Source: Hyaloraphidium curvatum SAG 235-1
Taxonomy: Eukaryota; Fungi; Monoblepharomycota
Length of the DNA: 64,000 nucleotides
Direction of reading: 5' to 3'
Assembly (NCBI GenBank): GCA_025558095.1
Contig: JAIVFI010000037.1
Location: 186,001 to 250,000, forward strand
The position numbers and the translations under genes were made by a program. Every line of letters begins with the position of its first letter. Positions within the stretch are counted from its first letter, which is position 1. The notes beneath the pieces were generated by a model. That model was not told where the DNA came from, searched no databases, and was given only the letters and a program-made list of their open reading frames with translations. This document shows positions 49,756 to 55,793 of the stretch, in pieces.

Positions 49756-50699
49756 TGGTTCGCTTCCCCTCGCCGGCCCCGCGGGCGTCGGCTGACCCCT
49801 CCTCCGGGGGCAAACAGCAGCTGAAGGCGAACATGCAGTACGAAGTCCTCGATGGGCCGCCGCCCCCGCCGTACCAGGCGTCGTCGTCGACGGCGATGCC
49901 GATGCCCGAGCCGCGGGTCGCCGCGTACGTGCCGCCCGAGATGGCGCAGGTCGCCGTGCCGGCCGAGCACAAGAGCCCCGTGCTGCCGCCGCCGTTCCCG
50001 GTGCCCGCGCCCGAGCCGCTGCCGGACCGCGAGCCCGACACGACGCTGGCGGTGCTCTACCTCGTGGGTGGCCGCGTCGCCCGCCCCGAAAAACGGAGGG
50101 GCGCTGATTTCCTCGGTGTCGTGCAGCTGTTCCTCGACCTGCCCTGGTCCATGTTCGCATTCTGCTGGATTTGGACCACCTGGCTCGCCTCCATCATGCT
50201 CTTCATCCTCCCCATCGTCGGCATCCCGTGCGTAGCCCCGCATTCCCCCCAGCCCAGTTGCGCTGACCCCCCGGCCGCAGCTTCTTCCTGCTCTTCGCAC
50301 ACTCGTGGCGCGGCCTCGCCGTCCTCGACCTCCTCCTCACCGACGCCCTGTGCCGCACGCGCGGGCCGGTCCCCCGCGTGGCGGTGCTCAAGGAGGGCTC
50401 GTGGTGGAAGTGGTACTCTGACGCGTGGAAGGAGGGGCTGACCATGCAGAGCGTGGGGTGGAGCTTCGTCAAGGTGGGCTGGGCTCGCACGGTGGCAGCC
50501 AGCATGCAATGCGGGGTGCTGATCGCTCGTTGGGGCGCAGATGCTGTTCTCCGTGTGCACCTTTACCGCGACCGTGTTCCTCGTCTGCGTCGCGCCGCTC
50601 TTCTTCCTCGTCTGCCTTGGGCCCCGCAAGGCTTTCGCGCCCATGCGCAAGATGGTGATTGCGCACCGCAACCTGGCCAGGGGCATCATCAAGGCATGA
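49756..50699 (+). CDS. Multi-pass membrane protein with N-terminal PPxY motif and putative-sensor (PF13796-like) domain, multi-exon
   Basis: PPPPPY, then LDLPWSMFAFCWIWTTW..SIMLFILPIVGIP and further TM exons joined by short introns. Confidence 0.55.
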
Positions 50700-51029
50700 T
50701 GGGGCGGACTTTGCCGCTCGCGGCCGACCATGGACGATTCGGCCTCAATGCCCCCTCTGCCACCGCAAAAGGCTTTTGGAAAATGTTGTGCTATGTAAAA
50801 CTACCCTTCCTTCCGCGCCGGGCCATGCCGTTACGAGCAAGAAAGTGTTCCCAATACACCGTCTCACGGGCACGCCCCATCCCGCTTCCCGAACCCCCGG
50901 GAAGCCGGACCTCCCGTCCGCGCCCCACCAAGACCGCCTCAAACCGCCGTGCCCGGGCCTTACAGCCCCTCGACGCCGCCGTCTAGCTCTAACCCCCGCT
51001 CTAGCCCCCTCCCCCGGCCCACCCCGCGC

Positions 51030-51573
51030 TCACGCCCGCTGCGAGAGGAACCAGCCCGCCACGGCCAGCAGCGCCACGCCGATGGCGATGACGGGGAGCG
51101 GCGCGCCGCCCGAGCCCTCCTTCTTGGCCTTCTTGGTGCCCTCCCCGGGTGCCGCCTTGCCGATGAGGTACTTCTTCATCATCTGCCGCGCCCCGTGCCC
51201 GGAATCAGCGCCGTGTCCGACAACCGTGGCCAGGAGAGGGGACCACGCACCGACTTGGCGTCCTCCGAGTGGCCGATGTCGTCGAAGGCGTCGCTCGCCT
51301 CGGACGAGTCGCCCGACACCTCGAGCATGACCTCCTCGCCGCCCGGGTGCTGCGGCGCCGATCGGGACCGGTCAGCGGCGATCGCGCGAACGCCACGAGG
51401 GTGTTCCCACCTCGTCCAGGTATTTTGTCACGTCGTACACGTTGCCGTGGATGATCAGCTTGGGCGGGGTCAGCGGCGGGCGGGGGCGCGGGGGGGGCGG
51501 CGCGCACCCAGCACGACTTGCGGTGGTTGTTGGCGGCGATCTCCTCGCGGGAGATGGTGCGGAGCTCGGCCAT
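51030..51573 (-). CDS. CYB5: Cytochrome b5, tail-anchored, 4 exons
   Basis: SCW|LIIHGNVYDVTKYLDE|HPGGEEVM...AFDDIGHSEDAK|QMMKKYLIG plus a C-terminal TM helix. Confidence 0.92.
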
Positions 51574-51803
51574 GGCGGGAAGGCGGGCAGGAGAGAAAGA
51601 GTGCGGAGTCGTGGCGCGGTGGCGGCAAAGACCATCGCCGATCAGCGCATCCGCGGAAGGGCGCGCACCCCGCCTCCGGCGCCGACCAGCCGCATCGGTG
51701 CTCGCAGAGTCATTCTAAGCCGCACTCCGGGGGTCGCGGGAGCCGCGGCCCGCGATTCGAGGCGACCGCCGAGGTCATCCCCGCCCCGGAACGGATCGCC
51801 GAG

Positions 51804-52330
51804 ATGGCCGCCCCATCGCAGCCGGAACCGACAATGGGCCACTTCGTATCATTCGCTGGCATTGAATGGGAGTCGGACGAGGGCCACTACCCCGGAGTGC
51901 GGTGGAAAACGCTGTTCAGCTCCGACCGCACGCCGACGGGTGGGTCGCCCCTCCGGCCCCCTTTCCACACACTACGAGAGCCCTAAGGACACTATGTGCA
52001 GCTAAGATTACCCAGGGCATCTGCGAGATCCCGCCGGGAAGGACTCTGATCCTCCACCACCACGCGCAGGCGCGTTGATCGCCCGACATCAACGCCCGCC
52101 CTGACACCGGCCCCCGACAGACCGAAACATACTGGTGCCTATCGGGCAGCGCGGAGGTGCGCGTTGGGGACCTGCCGCCGCGCACGGTCAAGGCCGGCGA
52201 GGGCGTGTGGATCCCAGGCGACGCGCCCCACCGGACTCATACCCCCGCCGACGCGACCGAGCCCTTTGTCTTTCTCTACACGTTCGCGACTGACAGCTTT
52301 CTGGACGTGTGCTATCACTACGATGAGTAG
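51804..52330 (+). CDS. DddK/DddW-like cupin (DMSP lyase-like), 3 exons (introns 51940-52001 GT-AG, 52070-52120 GC-AG)
   Basis: Spliced product: ...EWESDEGHYPGVRWKTLFSSDRTPTAKITQGICEIPPGRTLILHHHAQTETYWCLSGSAEVRVGDLPPRTVKAGEGVWIPGDAPHRT...FVFLYTFATDSFLDVCYHYDE*. Alternative start at 51834. Confidence 0.8.
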
Positions 52331-52407
52331 CGCCAAAGATTCCTACAGACCCGCGGACACCTCTCTAATGTCGGCGCAACTAATTAGTCAATCGGAGTTC
52401 TACGTGT

Positions 52408-53685
52408 CTATCTGCCCGGCTCGTCCGCCGGTTGTTCTGCCCCCGGAATCCGTATCCACGGCACGTCGCCGCCCCGTTCCGCGTCCTTGATCAGGCACGA
52501 AGGGGTCCTTCCCAGCTTTTCAAGCCACCACTCGATGCTCCTGATCTGCAGGTCCGTCACCAGGTCCTCGACGACGCTCGTGAGCCGCGCTCGCGCGAGA
52601 TCGGGATCCGACGTCCGCGCGAGCACCTGCCGCACGATGGGCCCGAAGTCCACGGGATCCCCGAACGCGAGCATGAAATCGTGGCCCGGCCGCGGGATGT
52701 AGATCCGGTGCAGCGGCAGCGCCATCTCCAACCCCCTCGCGTAGACCGGGACGAACCACGGCGTCTTGCACCCGAGCCCCATGCTGGGCTCCATGAGCAT
52801 CCGCCCCACGCCCCACTTGAACCGCAGCATCCTCTGCCCCTGGTGCACCCTGCCCTCGCTGAAGATGTGGATCCACCCCCCGCGCGCCATGCGGTCCAGC
52901 GCGCGGTCGACGCCCGCCTGGTACACGCCCAGCCCGCGGACAATGGGGATGCACTGCGCCTTGGTGAAGAACCAGTCCGCGAAGCGGTTCACGAAGGCGA
53001 CCTCCTTGGCCGCGAGCGTCCAGCGCGAGTAGCGGTGCGGCATCACGGCGAAGCGGTAGGGCAGCGAGGACCAGATGACGGGGTCGTCGACCGTCGCGGC
53101 GTGGTTCGACACGGTCACGATCGGCTGGTCCCGCGGGCGGCGCTGCACGAGCCGCTCGAACGCCTTCTGGTTCCGTATCGAGACGGAGCGCGGGCCGAGG
53201 ACCGGCAGGCGGAACCAGATTTTGGTCAGGGTCATGACGATGGGCGTGAAGAGGGAGGACCAGAAGCTGAAGGGCGGGGGAGGCAGCGCGGCGGGCTGCG
53301 GATCCGGCCGGGAAGGCGCCGACAGGGCATACCGGGCGATTTCGCCCAGCCAGTCGGACCTGGCGTCCGAATCCCACTGCTGCCGCGGTGCCGAACGGGC
53401 CGAACCGCCAGGAGTTCCCGCGGTTGGTCCCAAAGAGGATCCAGCGTCCGAGAATCCCTGTCCAGATGATGCATGCGGTATCGGCCTCTGGCCCGCGGCC
53501 GTCAGGAACCGATGCCAGGCCGTGGTCCGCTGGGAATCGTACACCCGCGTCCGGAGGAGCGCAAGCCGTGTCCGCAGCCGCGTGGGCCTCAGGGACGCCG
53601 CACGGGGCGCGGACCACGGCAGCCGAGTTTGCAGAGAGTCCAAGAACGCGGCAGAGAGCTGCGCCGCGTGCGATGGCCCGCGCAT
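52408..53685 (-). CDS. TAZ1: Tafazzin (cardiolipin transacylase)
   Basis: VTVSNHAATVDDPVIW, RWTLAAKE, IPIVRGLGVYQ, WIHIFSEGRV, LRFKWGVGR. Confidence 0.92.
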   Translation of the reverse strand: MRGPSHAAQLSAAFLDSLQTRLPWSAPRAASLRPTRLRTRLALLRTRVYDSQRTTAWHRFLTAAGQRPIPHASSGQGFSDAGSSLGPTAGTPGGSARSAPRQQWDSDARSDWLGEIARYALSAPSRPDPQPAALPPPPFSFWSSLFTPIVMTLTKIWFRLPVLGPRSVSIRNQKAFERLVQRRPRDQPIVTVSNHAATVDDPVIWSSLPYRFAVMPHRYSRWTLAAKEVAFVNRFADWFFTKAQCIPIVRGLGVYQAGVDRALDRMARGGWIHIFSEGRVHQGQRMLRFKWGVGRMLMEPSMGLGCKTPWFVPVYARGLEMALPLHRIYIPRPGHDFMLAFGDPVDFGPIVRQVLARTSDPDLARARLTSVVEDLVTDLQIRSIEWWLEKLGRTPSCLIKDAERGGDVPWIRIPGAEQPADEPGR

Positions 53686-53850
53686 TCTGACATGTCAAGT
53701 TTGGTTGTGAGCCGTTGTCGGCTGATAGCCTCAACATCACGCCTCGCACACGAGGGGCGGTCGCCCGCATCAGCCCGAGACTTGAAGACCATACATTACA
53801 TGAATACACGGCAGAGCTACAGTCTAAGATCTGTCTAGTGTTCGGCGGTT

Positions 53851-55793
53851 CTACTCGGGTATCCAAACGCCCAGCTGCCCCGGCCAGACGCTGAAGCACC
53901 CCCATCCCTCGTCGTTGATCCGCACGGGCGTGTTGTCGACGTAGTGCTTGAAGTTCCTTCCGGCGTGCCTCTTGCCCACGTACATCCACCTCGTCCCGCC
54001 GCCGTCCTTGGACAGGACCACGGCGAGGCCCGTTGGGCCGTCGTACCAGTCCAGCCCCTCACGGGTCCAGCCGATCGTGCACGGGTCCTTGTTCGGGACC
54101 GGTGGGCGGCTGAAGGGGTCATCGAACAGGATAAAGTCGTGCTGCTTGCCGTGCGCATGGGTCCGTCTGAGCCGCATGAGCCATTGGATGTGCGGCACCT
54201 GGTTGAGCTTGATGTTGTGCCTCCAGTCGCTCCAGGAGTCGCACACCTTGTTCCAGTACTCGGCTCCGTACACATCGGGGCTGGTAGTGTTTCGTGCAAT
54301 CAGCCAACGCAGGTGTTCACCGAGCACGGCAACTCACTAGAACACGCAGGGGTAACCCGAGGTGCGGAGCAGGATCAAGGCATAGGCGTGCGGACGGAAC
54401 CAATCCTGCACAAAGTCTCCCTCGCCGCGCTCGCCGAGGGCGCTCCTCAGCGGCTGGGTATCGTGGTTATCGACAAAGGTGACGGCAAAGTCGGGGTATC
54501 GCTGCATGAGCGTGCCGTTCAAGATCCGCCGGAGGTCGAAGGGACCGGAGGAGGCGGCCACAAGATTGTAGTGCAGAGGCATGTCAAAGAGCGAGACAGA
54601 GAAGTTCATGTTGTGTAGGTACTGCTCCAGGTCCCAGAGCTGCCCCGAGTAATACCTGCGAGACGACGTTAAGAACTCCAAGAGGCTCCTCGCCCTTCAG
54701 AACACTCACTCGGCGACAGAAAAAAGGTTGCGGCTCGTGTTGTGCCTCACGTGGGCGACCCAATCCCTCATGAAGCCCCAGTCGACGTGCTTGGCCGCGT
54801 CCAGGCGGAAGCCGTCGACCTTGACCTCCTTGACCATCCACTCTCCCCACCATTTCAGCCGGTTCGCGACGTTTGGGTTGCAGACGTCCAGGTCCAGCCC
54901 GGTGAGGAAGTCGTACGAGTATCCGGCCTCGTGCGACACATTGTGGTTCCCGGGCTTGTGCTTGATCCTGAAGCAGCCCCGCCGGTAGTGCCCGCTACCG
55001 TCCACGACCGAGCCAACCCAATCGAACCAGTCGTGGTTGACCCAGAAGTCGGCATGCTTCCCTTTTCGGCCCCAGTAGTTGAACTGGAACCCGGCGGGAG
55101 CGGTCAGCCGACGAAGCTGTGAAGGAGCGCGCCTCCTCGCCTTGGTCCAAATGTTGAACCACCCTTCCCCGATCTGTCTCGACCTATCGTGCTCGTCGAA
55201 CTCCAGGACCTCGACCCACTCGGTCTCGTCGCCGCCGTCCATGTGGTTCATAACGGCATCGGCGTAGACTTGAAGATTGTGGTAGTGGCAGCTCTTGACG
55301 GCATTGTGGAGCTCCCACTTCATGCCCCATTTGGTCCGCGTGGTCCCCTTTTGTGGGAACTCGCCGAGGTCGTAGTAGTCGTAGGGCCTGTCAAGTGTCA
55401 GGGCTTGCCGCGACGTGGCGGCGGCCTGGCGCCACCCACATGTAGCCGTTGTCCCAAGTGCCCCCGGCAGACTTTTGGGCGGGCGGAATCCAGATCGCAG
55501 TAACGCCGATCTTGGAGAGGAACTCGGCCTGGCACTCCAGCTCCCACCATAGCGATGTGTCGATGGGAACGTCTTTGAACCAGTGGAAGAACTGGAATCT
55601 GAGCCCGATAAGGCGATAAAGCAAGGCACGCATCGCGCAAGATGGGGAGCATTTGAATTAATTCCACGATTGGGGTCGCGCAGGGGTAGGCAGCCGGTAC
55701 GAACAGGATGCCGTTCAGCGGGAGTCGCTGGTCAAAGACCGGCGCCGCGTGCTCCTGAGGCTCTGCGGCGGCCGAATCGGAGGCCGACGACAT
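53851..55793 (-). CDS. Intracellular alpha-amylase, GH13_5 (Bacillus liquefying-type), multi-exon
   Basis: GVTAIWIPPA.K, YDLGEFPQKGTTRTKWG, DAVMNH, DGFRLDAAKH, FSVAEY, VTFVDNHDTQP, GYPCVFY. No signal peptide. Confidence 0.92.

What the first reader, a model, noticed from the sequence alone, without database searches (positions are those of the whole stretch)
51804..52330. Hidden three-exon DddK/DddW-like (DMSP lyase-like) cupin in a fungal-type genome
Seen: the gene is absent from the ORF track and appears only after removing a GT-AG intron (51940-52001) and a GC-AG intron (52070-52120). The product has YPGVRWK, E-I-x-PG, H-x-H-x3-E-x-Y (HHHAQTETY), IPGDAPH and F..TDSF.DV.Y. Knowledge (recalled, should be verified): SAR11 DddK has EW...YPGVRWK, the metal ligands His-x-His-x3-Glu plus a later His, a catalytic Tyr two residues after the Glu, and a C-terminal TD-F--V-Y segment. 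Roseobacter DddW has IPGDAEHGT. Inference: this is an intron-acquired, probably horizontally transferred cupin DMSP lyase or lyase-like enzyme. Described fungal DMSP cleavage is via DddP, so this would be a different route to DMS + acrylate, or a new substrate.
Basis: partly seen in the sequence, partly recalled or inferred. Interest (0 to 1): 0.85.

Follow-up and report, generated by a model that had tools for sequence, protein, structure and literature searches.

The report
Expressed DddK/DddF-like cupin gene in Hyaloraphidium
A real, spliced three-exon gene of the early-diverging freshwater fungus Hyaloraphidium curvatum encodes a small metal-binding cupin of the family that holds the DMSP lyases DddK (bacteria) and, by recent report, DddF (ascomycetes). 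This extends the family to a fungal phylum nobody has surveyed for it, but its real substrate is untested.

Summary
Exons 51804-51939, 52002-52069 and 52121-52330 encode a 137-aa protein identical to an NCBI entry, 'RmlC-like cupin domain-containing protein [Hyaloraphidium curvatum]'. The gene is therefore annotated, not hidden. An RNA contig removes exactly the 62-nt GT-AG and 51-nt GC-AG introns.

DddK is the best solved relative by sequence (E 4e-16) and by fold (TM 0.85/0.91, rmsd 1.5 Å). All DddK metal ligands (H64, H66, E70, H105), both essential tyrosines (Y72, Y133) and Trp26 (W34) are kept.

It is not an orthologue of DddK. It forms a strongly supported Monoblepharomycota clade with an intronless paralogue in the same genome and with two Gonapodya proteins. 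The scan had already noted that paralogue on other DNA (s1-702023). This clade lies outside both the DddK clade and an ascomycete clade that is presumably DddF, the DddK-like fungal DMSP lyase published in October 2026.

The catalytic signature is shared by the whole, mostly bacterial, family, so it does not prove DMSP specificity. Any transfer from bacteria is ancient and has no identifiable donor.

Verdict: a new member of a known kind. In-vitro DMSP cleavage is likely; a physiological role in this freshwater fungus is open.

The parts
51804..51939 (+). Exon 1: ATG, residues 1-45, and the first base of codon 46. It holds YPGVRWK, with W34 (51903-51905) aligned to DddK Trp26.
   Evidence: The RNA contig covers 51508-51938 and then jumps. 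Exon 1 alone hits DddK residues 8-33.
51940..52001 (+). Intron 1, 62 nt, GT..AG.
   Evidence: joint 51938->52001, skips 62, 'GT..AG (cut +1)', in an X1 contig of 2134 nt.
52002..52069 (+). Exon 2: residues 46-68 (A-KITQGICEIPPGRTLILHHHAQ). It carries the first part of cupin motif 1, with H64 at 52055-52057 and H66 at 52061-52063.
   Evidence: The RNA contig piece covers 52001-52066.
52070..52120 (+). Intron 2, 51 nt, GC..AG. It splits cupin motif 1 between Q68 and T69 and contains an in-frame TGA at 52076-52078.
   Evidence: joint 52066->52118, skips 51, with 3 bases fitting either side. Only the 52070-52120 placement gives an AG acceptor. The mRNA is the same for all four placements.
52121..52330 (+). 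Exon 3: residues 69-137 plus the TAG stop. It holds E70 (52124-52126), Y72 (52130-52132), H105 (52229-52231), Y121, and Y133 (52313-52315).
   Evidence: Cupin_2 scores 8.6e-6 on this exon alone. The exon aligns to DddK residues 80-122. The RNA contig is continuous from 52118 onward.

Best explanation
This is a genuine, transcribed and spliced nuclear gene of Hyaloraphidium curvatum (Monoblepharomycota). [quoted passage not shown]

Inferred mechanism, by homology to DddK: one divalent transition-metal ion is held by H64, H66, E70 and H105. The carboxylate of a beta-substituted propionate binds the metal and is anchored by Y72 and Y133. The Y72 tyrosinate, backed up by Y133, removes the alpha-proton, and the leaving group departs by beta-elimination. 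With DMSP the products would be DMS and acrylate.

Shown here: gene structure, splicing, fold, residue conservation and family placement. Inferred: metal dependence, lyase chemistry and DMSP as a substrate. I expect measurable DMSP (and DMSOP) cleavage in vitro. Whether DMSP is the native substrate in this freshwater fungus is open.

The gene belongs to an old Monoblepharomycota-specific clade that duplicated before Hyaloraphidium and Gonapodya split. This copy gained two introns, or alone kept them.
For: Gene and splicing:
- The product is identical to NCBI protein P0001.
- An RNA contig removes both introns. The neighbouring cytochrome b5-like gene's introns are also removed in the same run, so the run is RNA.

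Similarity to DddK:
- DddK (6A53/5TFZ) is the top PDB sequence hit: E 3.6e-16, residues 15-133 against 8-122. The next hit, oxalate decarboxylase, scores 4e-7.
- The AlphaFold2 model has pLDDT 95.8. Foldseek ranks DddK first: TM 0.85/0.91, rmsd 1.5 Å, 32-33% identity, E 8e-12. The next hit scores 1.8e-8.
- DddK's essential residues are H56, H58, E62, H96, Y64, Y122 and W26 (PMC12582016). They align to H64, H66, E70, H105, Y72, Y133 and W34.

Family and phylogeny:
- H64, H66 and E70 are invariant, and Y72, H105 and Y133 nearly invariant, across 88 homologues.
- IQ-TREE places the clade P0001 + (paralogue P0044 + 2 Gonapodya) at 100/99. It sits on the same side of a 100/98 split as the ascomycete clade, away from the DddK clade.
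- P0001 matches the ascomycete-clade consensus at all 11 active-site positions examined.
- DddF, about 30% identical to DddK, is an efficient DMSP lyase, and diverse DddF homologues were active in vitro (PMC13738216).
- P0001 therefore branches between two characterised DMSP-lyase groups.
Against: - No assay exists for this protein or for any member of its clade.
- The catalytic signature is shared by the whole family: 564 clusters at 50% identity with E<=1e-3. These are mostly bacterial and include soil and plant-associated taxa such as Agrobacterium rhizogenes, Mesorhizobium and Rubrobacter. The signature therefore does not discriminate DMSP lyases.
- Lei et al. concluded that most cupin-DLL proteins are not DMSP lyases and that several Ddd activities are promiscuous (10.1101/161257 and 10.1101/168930).
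- Monoblepharomycota are, to my knowledge, freshwater organisms, and Hyaloraphidium's lifestyle is described as unclear (PMC6899921). DMSP is chiefly a marine metabolite (general knowledge).
- Bacterial homologues are stand-alone genes with no DMSP or acrylate genes beside them. The fungal gene's neighbours are a cytochrome b5-like gene and an acyltransferase, which give no clue.
- DddK Trp110 is Tyr121 here.
- I could not obtain the authentic DddF sequence (PQ816729), so calling the ascomycete clade DddF is a presumption.
Confidence: 0.6

Rival explanations
1. It is a DddK/DddF-family cupin whose native reaction is not DMSP cleavage. It could be another beta-elimination, isomerisation or addition on a small carboxylate. 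Any DMSP lyase activity would then be absent or merely promiscuous.
For: - The active-site signature is family-wide, across hundreds of mostly bacterial clusters from non-marine and marine sources.
- DddK itself is slow (kcat 0.9 s-1, KM 3.7 mM; PMC11497337) and accepts other chemistry, namely aza-Michael addition (PMC12582016).
- The hosts, Hyaloraphidium and Gonapodya, are freshwater organisms to my knowledge.
- No genomic context points to DMSP.
- The paralogue P0044 has Cys in place of the catalytic Tyr, which shows functional drift within the clade.
Against: - Both characterised relatives on either side of it in the tree (DddK, and presumably DddF) cleave DMSP.
- Every residue known to matter in DddK except Trp110 is kept. 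At that position P0001 has the Tyr seen in the ascomycete clade.
Confidence: 0.35
2. It is a recent bacterial transfer, or bacterial contamination of the assembly, as opposed to an old resident fungal gene.
For: The family is overwhelmingly bacterial. The best bacterial matches reach 44-47% identity, for example L005 from a Rhizobiaceae MAG, which ends in the same YHYDE.
Against: - The gene has two spliceosomal introns, both removed in RNA.
- It lies on a 531,647-bp contig between intron-bearing eukaryotic genes.
- Its G+C (about 0.63-0.69) is in the range of the flanks.
- Its nearest relatives are a paralogue on another contig of the same genome and two Gonapodya proteins, in a 100/99 clade.
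Confidence: 0.02
3. It is a decaying or non-functional gene copy.
For: An intronless paralogue exists. This copy is the more divergent branch relative to Gonapodya.
Against: - The reading frame is intact after splicing.
- The gene is represented in RNA.
- All invariant family residues are kept.
- The AlphaFold model is confident, at pLDDT 95.8.
Confidence: 0.03

Closest known systems
DddK, DMSP lyase of Pelagibacter ubique HTCC1062 (PDB 5TFZ, 5TG0, 6A53)
   Same: - Single small cupin barrel of about 130 aa.
- Best sequence hit (E 3.6e-16) and best fold hit (TM 0.85/0.91, rmsd 1.5 Å).
- Conserved H-x-H-x3-E-x-Y motif plus the later His.
- The C-terminal Tyr (Y122 aligned to Y133) and Trp26 (aligned to W34) are kept.
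   Different: - Only 32-33% identical.
- Lies outside the DddK-like clade (100/98 support).
- DddK Trp110 is Tyr121 here.
- It is eukaryotic, with two introns, in a freshwater fungus. dddK has been described as confined to SAR11 (PMC11497337).
DddF, cupin DMSP lyase of Aureobasidium melanogenum and other ascomycetes (ISME J 2026, PMC13738216)
   Same: - A fungal, cytoplasmic, DddK-like cupin, about 30% identical to DddK.
- P0001 is 38% identical to an ascomycete family member (P0189, Elasticomyces/Exophiala).
- P0001 matches the ascomycete-clade consensus at all 11 active-site positions checked.
   Different: - P0001 lies outside the ascomycete clade (99/94 support), in a separate Monoblepharomycota clade.
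- It falls below the paper's 40% identity criterion against the one ascomycete member compared.
- The paper searched only Ascomycota and Basidiomycota.
- A single fungal origin is not rejected (AU p 0.20).
Cupin-DLL superfamily (DddQ, DddW, DddL, DddY; Pfam PF16867 DMSP_lyase)
   Same: Shares the two cupin motifs with His, His, Glu and Tyr, plus a third His. DddQ chains are weaker PDB hits by sequence and fold (5CU1 at E 5e-5; 4B29 at Foldseek E 1.8e-8).
   Different: PF16867 scores 18.6 bits, below its gathering cut-off of 27. The spacing is H-x-H-x3-E, as in DddK, and not the H-x-H-x4-E reported for DddY. These proteins are also longer.

Membership tests
Cupin_2 (PF07883), RmlC-like cupin fold | Pfam match above the gathering score, and a beta-barrel fold | tested here: met
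   42.4 bits against a cut-off of 27.2. The AF2 model has pLDDT 95.8 and is all-beta. All top Foldseek hits are cupins.
DddK (SAR11 DMSP lyase) | Metal ligands His56, His58, Glu62, His96 | tested here: met
   They align to H64, H66, E70 and H105. Residue roles are from PMC12582016.
DddK (SAR11 DMSP lyase) | Essential tyrosines Tyr64 and Tyr122 | tested here: met
   Y72 and Y133.
DddK (SAR11 DMSP lyase) | Active-site tryptophans Trp26 and Trp110 | tested here: inconclusive
   Trp26 is kept as W34. Trp110 is Tyr121, as in the ascomycete clade and most of the family. The DddK-like clade has W in 14 of 16 rows.
DddK (SAR11 DMSP lyase) | Phylogenetic placement inside the DddK clade (orthology) | tested here: not met
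   The DddK-like clade of 16 rows is separated at 100/98 from the 75 rows that include P0001. That clade is anchored by P0110, which scores 108 bits to DddK. The authentic DddK sequence itself was not in the tree.
DddK / DddF | DMSP-dependent production of DMS and acrylate | not testable with these tools
   Needs enzyme or culture assays.
DddF (fungal cupin DMSP lyase) | At least 40% identity and 60% coverage to A. melanogenum DddF, and membership of the fungal DddF clade (criteria of PMC13738216) | tested here: inconclusive
   The DddF sequence (PQ816729) was not obtainable, and no supplement is held. Against the presumptive DddF clade (Exophiala, Elasticomyces, Penicillium, Sphaceloma, Vermiconidia), P0001 is 38% identical to P0189 and falls outside the 99/94 clade. 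Even so, a tree with all fungal rows held together is not rejected (p-AU 0.204).
DMSP_lyase (PF16867; DddL/DddQ/DddW type) | Pfam match above the gathering score | tested here: not met
   18.6 bits against a cut-off of 27, E 0.0017.

The most novel reading that the evidence does not exclude
The Monoblepharomycota clade (P0001, its paralogue and the Gonapodya proteins) is a third, independently maintained lineage of functional DddK/DddF-type lyases in freshwater early-diverging fungi. Two readings follow. One is that it cleaves DMSP or DMSOP, so cupin-mediated DMS production is ancestral in Fungi or was acquired twice, and it reaches freshwater habitats. The other is that its selective substrate is a different onium or beta-substituted propionate, which would reveal the long-sought primary function of this cupin-DLL branch.
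Probability: 0.25. Interest if true: 0.6.

Novelty: new member of a known kind. Interest (0 to 1): 0.38.

Why it matters
A DddK-like cupin DMSP lyase in fungi (DddF) was described only in October 2026, and only for Ascomycota. The authors did not search zoosporic or early-diverging fungi. This gene, its paralogue and the Gonapodya homologues show that the family is also present, old and expressed in Monoblepharomycota, which are freshwater organisms.

That provides a cheap test case for an open question raised by Lei and Tawfik: is DMSP cleavage the native job of the DddK-type cupins, or a promiscuous side reaction of a family with another primary function? It also bears on whether fungi acquired these cupins once or several times.

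If the enzyme proves active and selective, the known phylogenetic and ecological range of DMS-producing fungi widens. If not, it is a useful negative control for annotating 'DMSP lyase family' proteins.

Tried and rejected
Method note:
- Every full-length analysis used P0001, the database protein returned, which happens to equal the model.

Searches that gave nothing useful:
- The search for homologous proteins with P0001 alone returned only itself, because of its word-index limits. The profile search and the exhaustive HMMER search were needed.
- NCBIfam has no DddK-type model. The best hit was a weak (R)-mandelonitrile lyase match, 19.8 bits against a cut-off of 140, which I dismissed.
The 12-row alignment worked, but its pattern H[HR]H[AEP][QPH]xE[TV]Y[YF] excludes DddK itself. 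It also biases the hit list, which is dominated by sponge-associated Poribacteria MAGs, so no donor inference was drawn.
- Gene neighbourhoods of three bacterial homologues gave no DMSP, acrylate or transporter link.

Hits rejected as spurious:
- The very long top-scoring hits (P0002-P0005 and others) match only residues of about 73-123, repeatedly. The one I checked (P0054) is an Ig-like/Fib_succ repeat protein.

Sources I could not obtain:
- Peng et al. 2019 (PMC6450030) is not held, so residue roles were taken from PMC12582016.
- The DddF paper's supplement is not held, so the DddF sequence could not be placed.
- No paper links Poribacteria and DddK.

Explanations rejected:
- Contamination, recent transfer and pseudogene, because of the splicing, the flanking genes, the G+C content and the clade with Gonapodya.

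Full report
**1. The observation**

Reading 51500-52700 shows an ATG at 51804. The frame stays open to a GTGGGT donor at 51940. A CAG acceptor ends at 52001, and a 68-nt exon ends ...CACCACCACGCGCAG at 52069. It is followed by GCGCGT, and a second acceptor ends at 52120. The third exon runs to TAG at 52328-52330.

Translations by reference give three pieces:
- MAAPSQ...DRTPT
- KITQGICEIPPGRTLILHHHAQ
- TETYWCLSG...DVCYHYDE*

Intron 2 is 51 nt and in frame, but it carries a TGA at 52076, so it cannot be read through.

**2. How the spliced model was searched**

- Exon 3 alone hits Cupin_2 (8.6e-6), and in the PDB it hits DddQ and DddK.
- Exon 1 alone hits only DddK chains, residues 8-33.
- The two matches are colinear on DddK.

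A search with the open frame around exon 3 returned one protein, P0001. It is 137 aa, from NCBI, and named 'RmlC-like cupin domain-containing protein [Hyaloraphidium curvatum]', on a 531,647-bp contig. The genome is therefore Hyaloraphidium curvatum (Monoblepharomycota), and the gene is already annotated under a generic name. All later full-length work used P0001 as returned by the database.

**3. Splicing**

One RNA-type run (X1) holds 76% of the sampled words of the region. Laid on 50500-53900, a 2134-nt contig covers three stretches:
- 51508-51938
- 52001-52066
- 52118-53714

It skips 62 bases (GT..AG with the cut moved by one, that is 51940-52001). It also skips 51 bases, with three bases fitting either side. 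Of the four possible placements only 52070-52120 has an AG acceptor, with a GC donor. The mRNA is the same for all four.

The same run removes two GT-AG introns (read on the minus strand) from the neighbouring cytochrome b5-like gene, so the run is processed RNA. Contigs cannot give the strand, the ends or the level of a transcript. The contig also runs on through the convergent acyltransferase gene (52408-53685, minus strand; PF01553), so it is not evidence for a single transcript.

**4. What the protein is**

*Sequence.* P0001 matches Cupin_2 (42.4 bits) and Cupin_7. It matches the DddL/Q/W-type PF16867 only below threshold. In the PDB, DddK (6A53/5TFZ) is first at E 3.6e-16, with residues 15-133 against 8-122. 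That is nine orders of magnitude ahead of oxalate decarboxylase. DddQ (5CU1) scores 5e-5 and 4B29 scores 0.18.

*Fold.* An AlphaFold2 model built on 88 homologues has pLDDT 95.8. Foldseek ranks the six DddK chains first: TM 0.82-0.85 by the model and 0.82-0.91 by the chain, rmsd 1.5-1.8 Å, 31-33% identity, E about 1e-11. Next come DddQII 4B29 and the RemF cyclase at about 2e-8.

*Active site.* According to PMC12582016, DddK's active site comprises:
- metal ligands His56, His58, Glu62 and His96;
- the essential Tyr64 (the proposed base) and Tyr122;
- Trp26 and Trp110 lining the pocket.

In the alignment these correspond to H64, H66, E70, H105, Y72, Y133, W34 and Y121. All are kept except Trp110, which is Tyr here.

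**5. The family**

An exhaustive HMMER search of 1.84 billion cluster representatives found 564 clusters at E<=1e-3 and 146 at E<=1e-10. Most are single-domain proteins of about 125-180 aa, 35-50% identical to P0001. Nearly all of those listed carry H-x-H-x3-E-x-Y and a C-terminal F-x-D-V-x-Y.

In an 88-row alignment, G51, H64, H66 and E70 are invariant. Y72, G77, G94, P100, H105, F123 and Y133 are at least 90% conserved.

Named members are mostly bacterial:
- Agrobacterium rhizogenes
- Moorea
- Mesorhizobium (named 'dimethylsulfonioproprionate lyase family protein' by NCBI)
- Stappia indica
- Rubrobacter
- many metagenomic proteins

The ESM Atlas neighbours are 87-100% bacterial by the members that carry a record. 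In GTDB species genomes, a pattern-biased scan returned mainly sponge-associated Poribacteria, Vicinamibacterales and Alphaproteobacteria MAGs at 35-47% identity.

The very long 'hits' at the top are spurious. They are repeat proteins that match only residues of about 73-123, and the one checked, P0054, is an Ig-like repeat protein.

**6. Nearest relatives and phylogeny**

The closest single-domain hits are fungal and from the same phylum: Gonapodya sp. JEL0774 (P0007) and Gonapodya prolifera JEL478 (P0023).

The window's own genome holds a second copy on contig C31. It is 39-42% identical and intronless. This is P0044, 148 aa. The scan had already noted it (s1-702023). The Gonapodya genes, and an ascomycete homologue, are also intronless.

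An IQ-TREE analysis (LG+C20 PMSF, 91 rows, 131 columns) gives three supported groups:
- (i) A Monoblepharomycota clade, P0001 + (P0044 + (P0007, P0023)), at 100/99, with the inner trio at 100/98.
- (ii) A DddK-like clade of 16 rows at 100/98. It is anchored by P0110, which scores 108 bits against DddK with residues 8-126 aligned colinearly. It is separated from all other rows.
- (iii) A 14-row clade at 99/94. Its named members are all ascomycetes: Exophiala sideris/Elasticomyces elasticus, Penicillium atrosanguineum, Sphaceloma murrayae and Vermiconidia calcicola.

The backbone among the remaining bacterial groups is unresolved. Holding all 18 fungal rows together costs 18.5 log-likelihood units and is not rejected (p-AU 0.204).

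Two conclusions follow:
- The duplication that gave P0001 and P0044 predates the Hyaloraphidium-Gonapodya split, so the gene is an old resident.
- Neither a donor nor the number of acquisitions can be determined from these data.

**7. Comparison with the literature**

Liu et al. (ISME J, 17 October 2026; PMC13738216) describe DddF, and also cite a DddW in Aspergillus:
- DddF is a cytoplasmic cupin of Aureobasidium melanogenum, about 30% identical to DddK.
- It is required for growth on DMSP, with kcat 45 s-1 and KM 19 mM.
- Active homologues occur across Dothideomycetes, Eurotiomycetes, Sordariomycetes, Leotiomycetes, Pezizomycetes and Pichiomycetes.

Their BLAST survey covered only the classes of Ascomycota and Basidiomycota, so Monoblepharomycota were not examined.

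The ascomycete clade in my tree has the taxonomic range and the similarity to DddK (P0189: 67.7 bits) expected of DddF. I could not obtain the DddF sequence to confirm this.

P0001 is 38% identical to P0189. At all 11 active-site and core positions examined it is identical to the ascomycete-clade consensus, including Tyr at the DddK Trp110 position.

Against an automatic functional transfer, Lei et al. defined the cupin-DLL superfamily by these same residues. They concluded that most members are not DMSP lyases, and that some Ddd activities are promiscuous.

**8. Mechanism and its likelihood**

By homology the protein should bind one transition-metal ion through H64, H66, E70 and H105. It should bind a carboxylate substrate on the metal, with Y72 and Y133 anchoring it. 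Y72 would act as the base for beta-elimination.

P0001 attaches to the tree between two groups with demonstrated DMSP lyase activity, and it keeps their residues. I therefore put in-vitro DMSP/DMSOP cleavage at about 0.6.

A physiological role in DMSP catabolism is less likely (about 0.3), for three reasons:
- The hosts are, to my knowledge, freshwater organisms, and Hyaloraphidium's lifestyle is described as unclear (PMC6899921).
- Bacterial homologues are stand-alone genes without DMSP or acrylate neighbours.
- The fungal neighbours are uninformative.

The paralogue P0044 has Cys where the catalytic Tyr should be (ETCF), so at least one copy has diverged in function.

**9. Verdict**

'DddK-like' is correct as a resemblance and as broad-family membership. 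Orthology to DddK fails. Membership of DddF is undecided, and the tree leans against it. The 'hidden gene' and 'only DddP in fungi' points do not hold.

This is a new member, in fact a small new fungal clade, of a known kind. It is of moderate interest, mainly as a test case for the native function and the fungal history of DddK/DddF-type cupins.

Noticed in passing
L003:1438-1884 (= G000:C31, about 364588-365034, + strand): Intronless paralogue of the cupin (P0044, 148 aa, 39-42% identical to P0001). It groups with the Gonapodya proteins and not with P0001. It has Cys in place of the catalytic Tyr (HHHEQPETCF), while the metal ligands and the C-terminal Tyr are kept. Already noted by the scan as s1-702023.
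   Followed up: partly
window 51126-51573 (- strand): Divergently oriented cytochrome b5-like gene (weak PF00173 match). Its introns at about 51183-51250 and 51350-51410 are removed in the RNA contigs. A 218-nt spliced contig with no differing letters over the part that fits also occurs in an oligo-dT RNA-seq run labelled biofilm metagenome (X2). This suggests that H. curvatum, or a very near relative, lives in that biofilm. A low-depth alternative joint (51350->51413) is probably an assembly variant.
   Followed up: no
window 52330-52408 and 52408-53685 (- strand): A convergent, intronless acyltransferase gene (PF01553, 425-aa ORF) ends only about 78 nt from the cupin stop codon. One RNA contig runs through both genes, so their 3' ends probably overlap, or the assembler merged them.
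   Followed up: no
L005-L084 (GTDB genome loci): Among species-representative bacterial genomes, the nearest relatives found with the motif pattern are dominated by sponge-associated Candidatus Poribacteria, Vicinamibacterales and Alphaproteobacteria MAGs. No held paper links Poribacteria with DddK. The scan's pattern biases this list.
   Followed up: partly
P0002-P0005, P0009-P0012, P0054 (hits): Giant repeat proteins (1,000-7,800 aa) score highly against residues of about 73-123 of the cupin, through 6-26 repeated stretches. The one checked (P0054) is an Ig-like/Fib_succ_major repeat protein, so these are not cupin relatives.
   Followed up: partly
window 52070-52120: The GC-AG intron splits cupin motif 1 exactly between Q68 and T69 (HHHAQ | TETY). 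Another first-reader note (s1-715219) reports repeated GC-AG introns in 52070-55140. Only this one was checked against RNA.
   Followed up: partly
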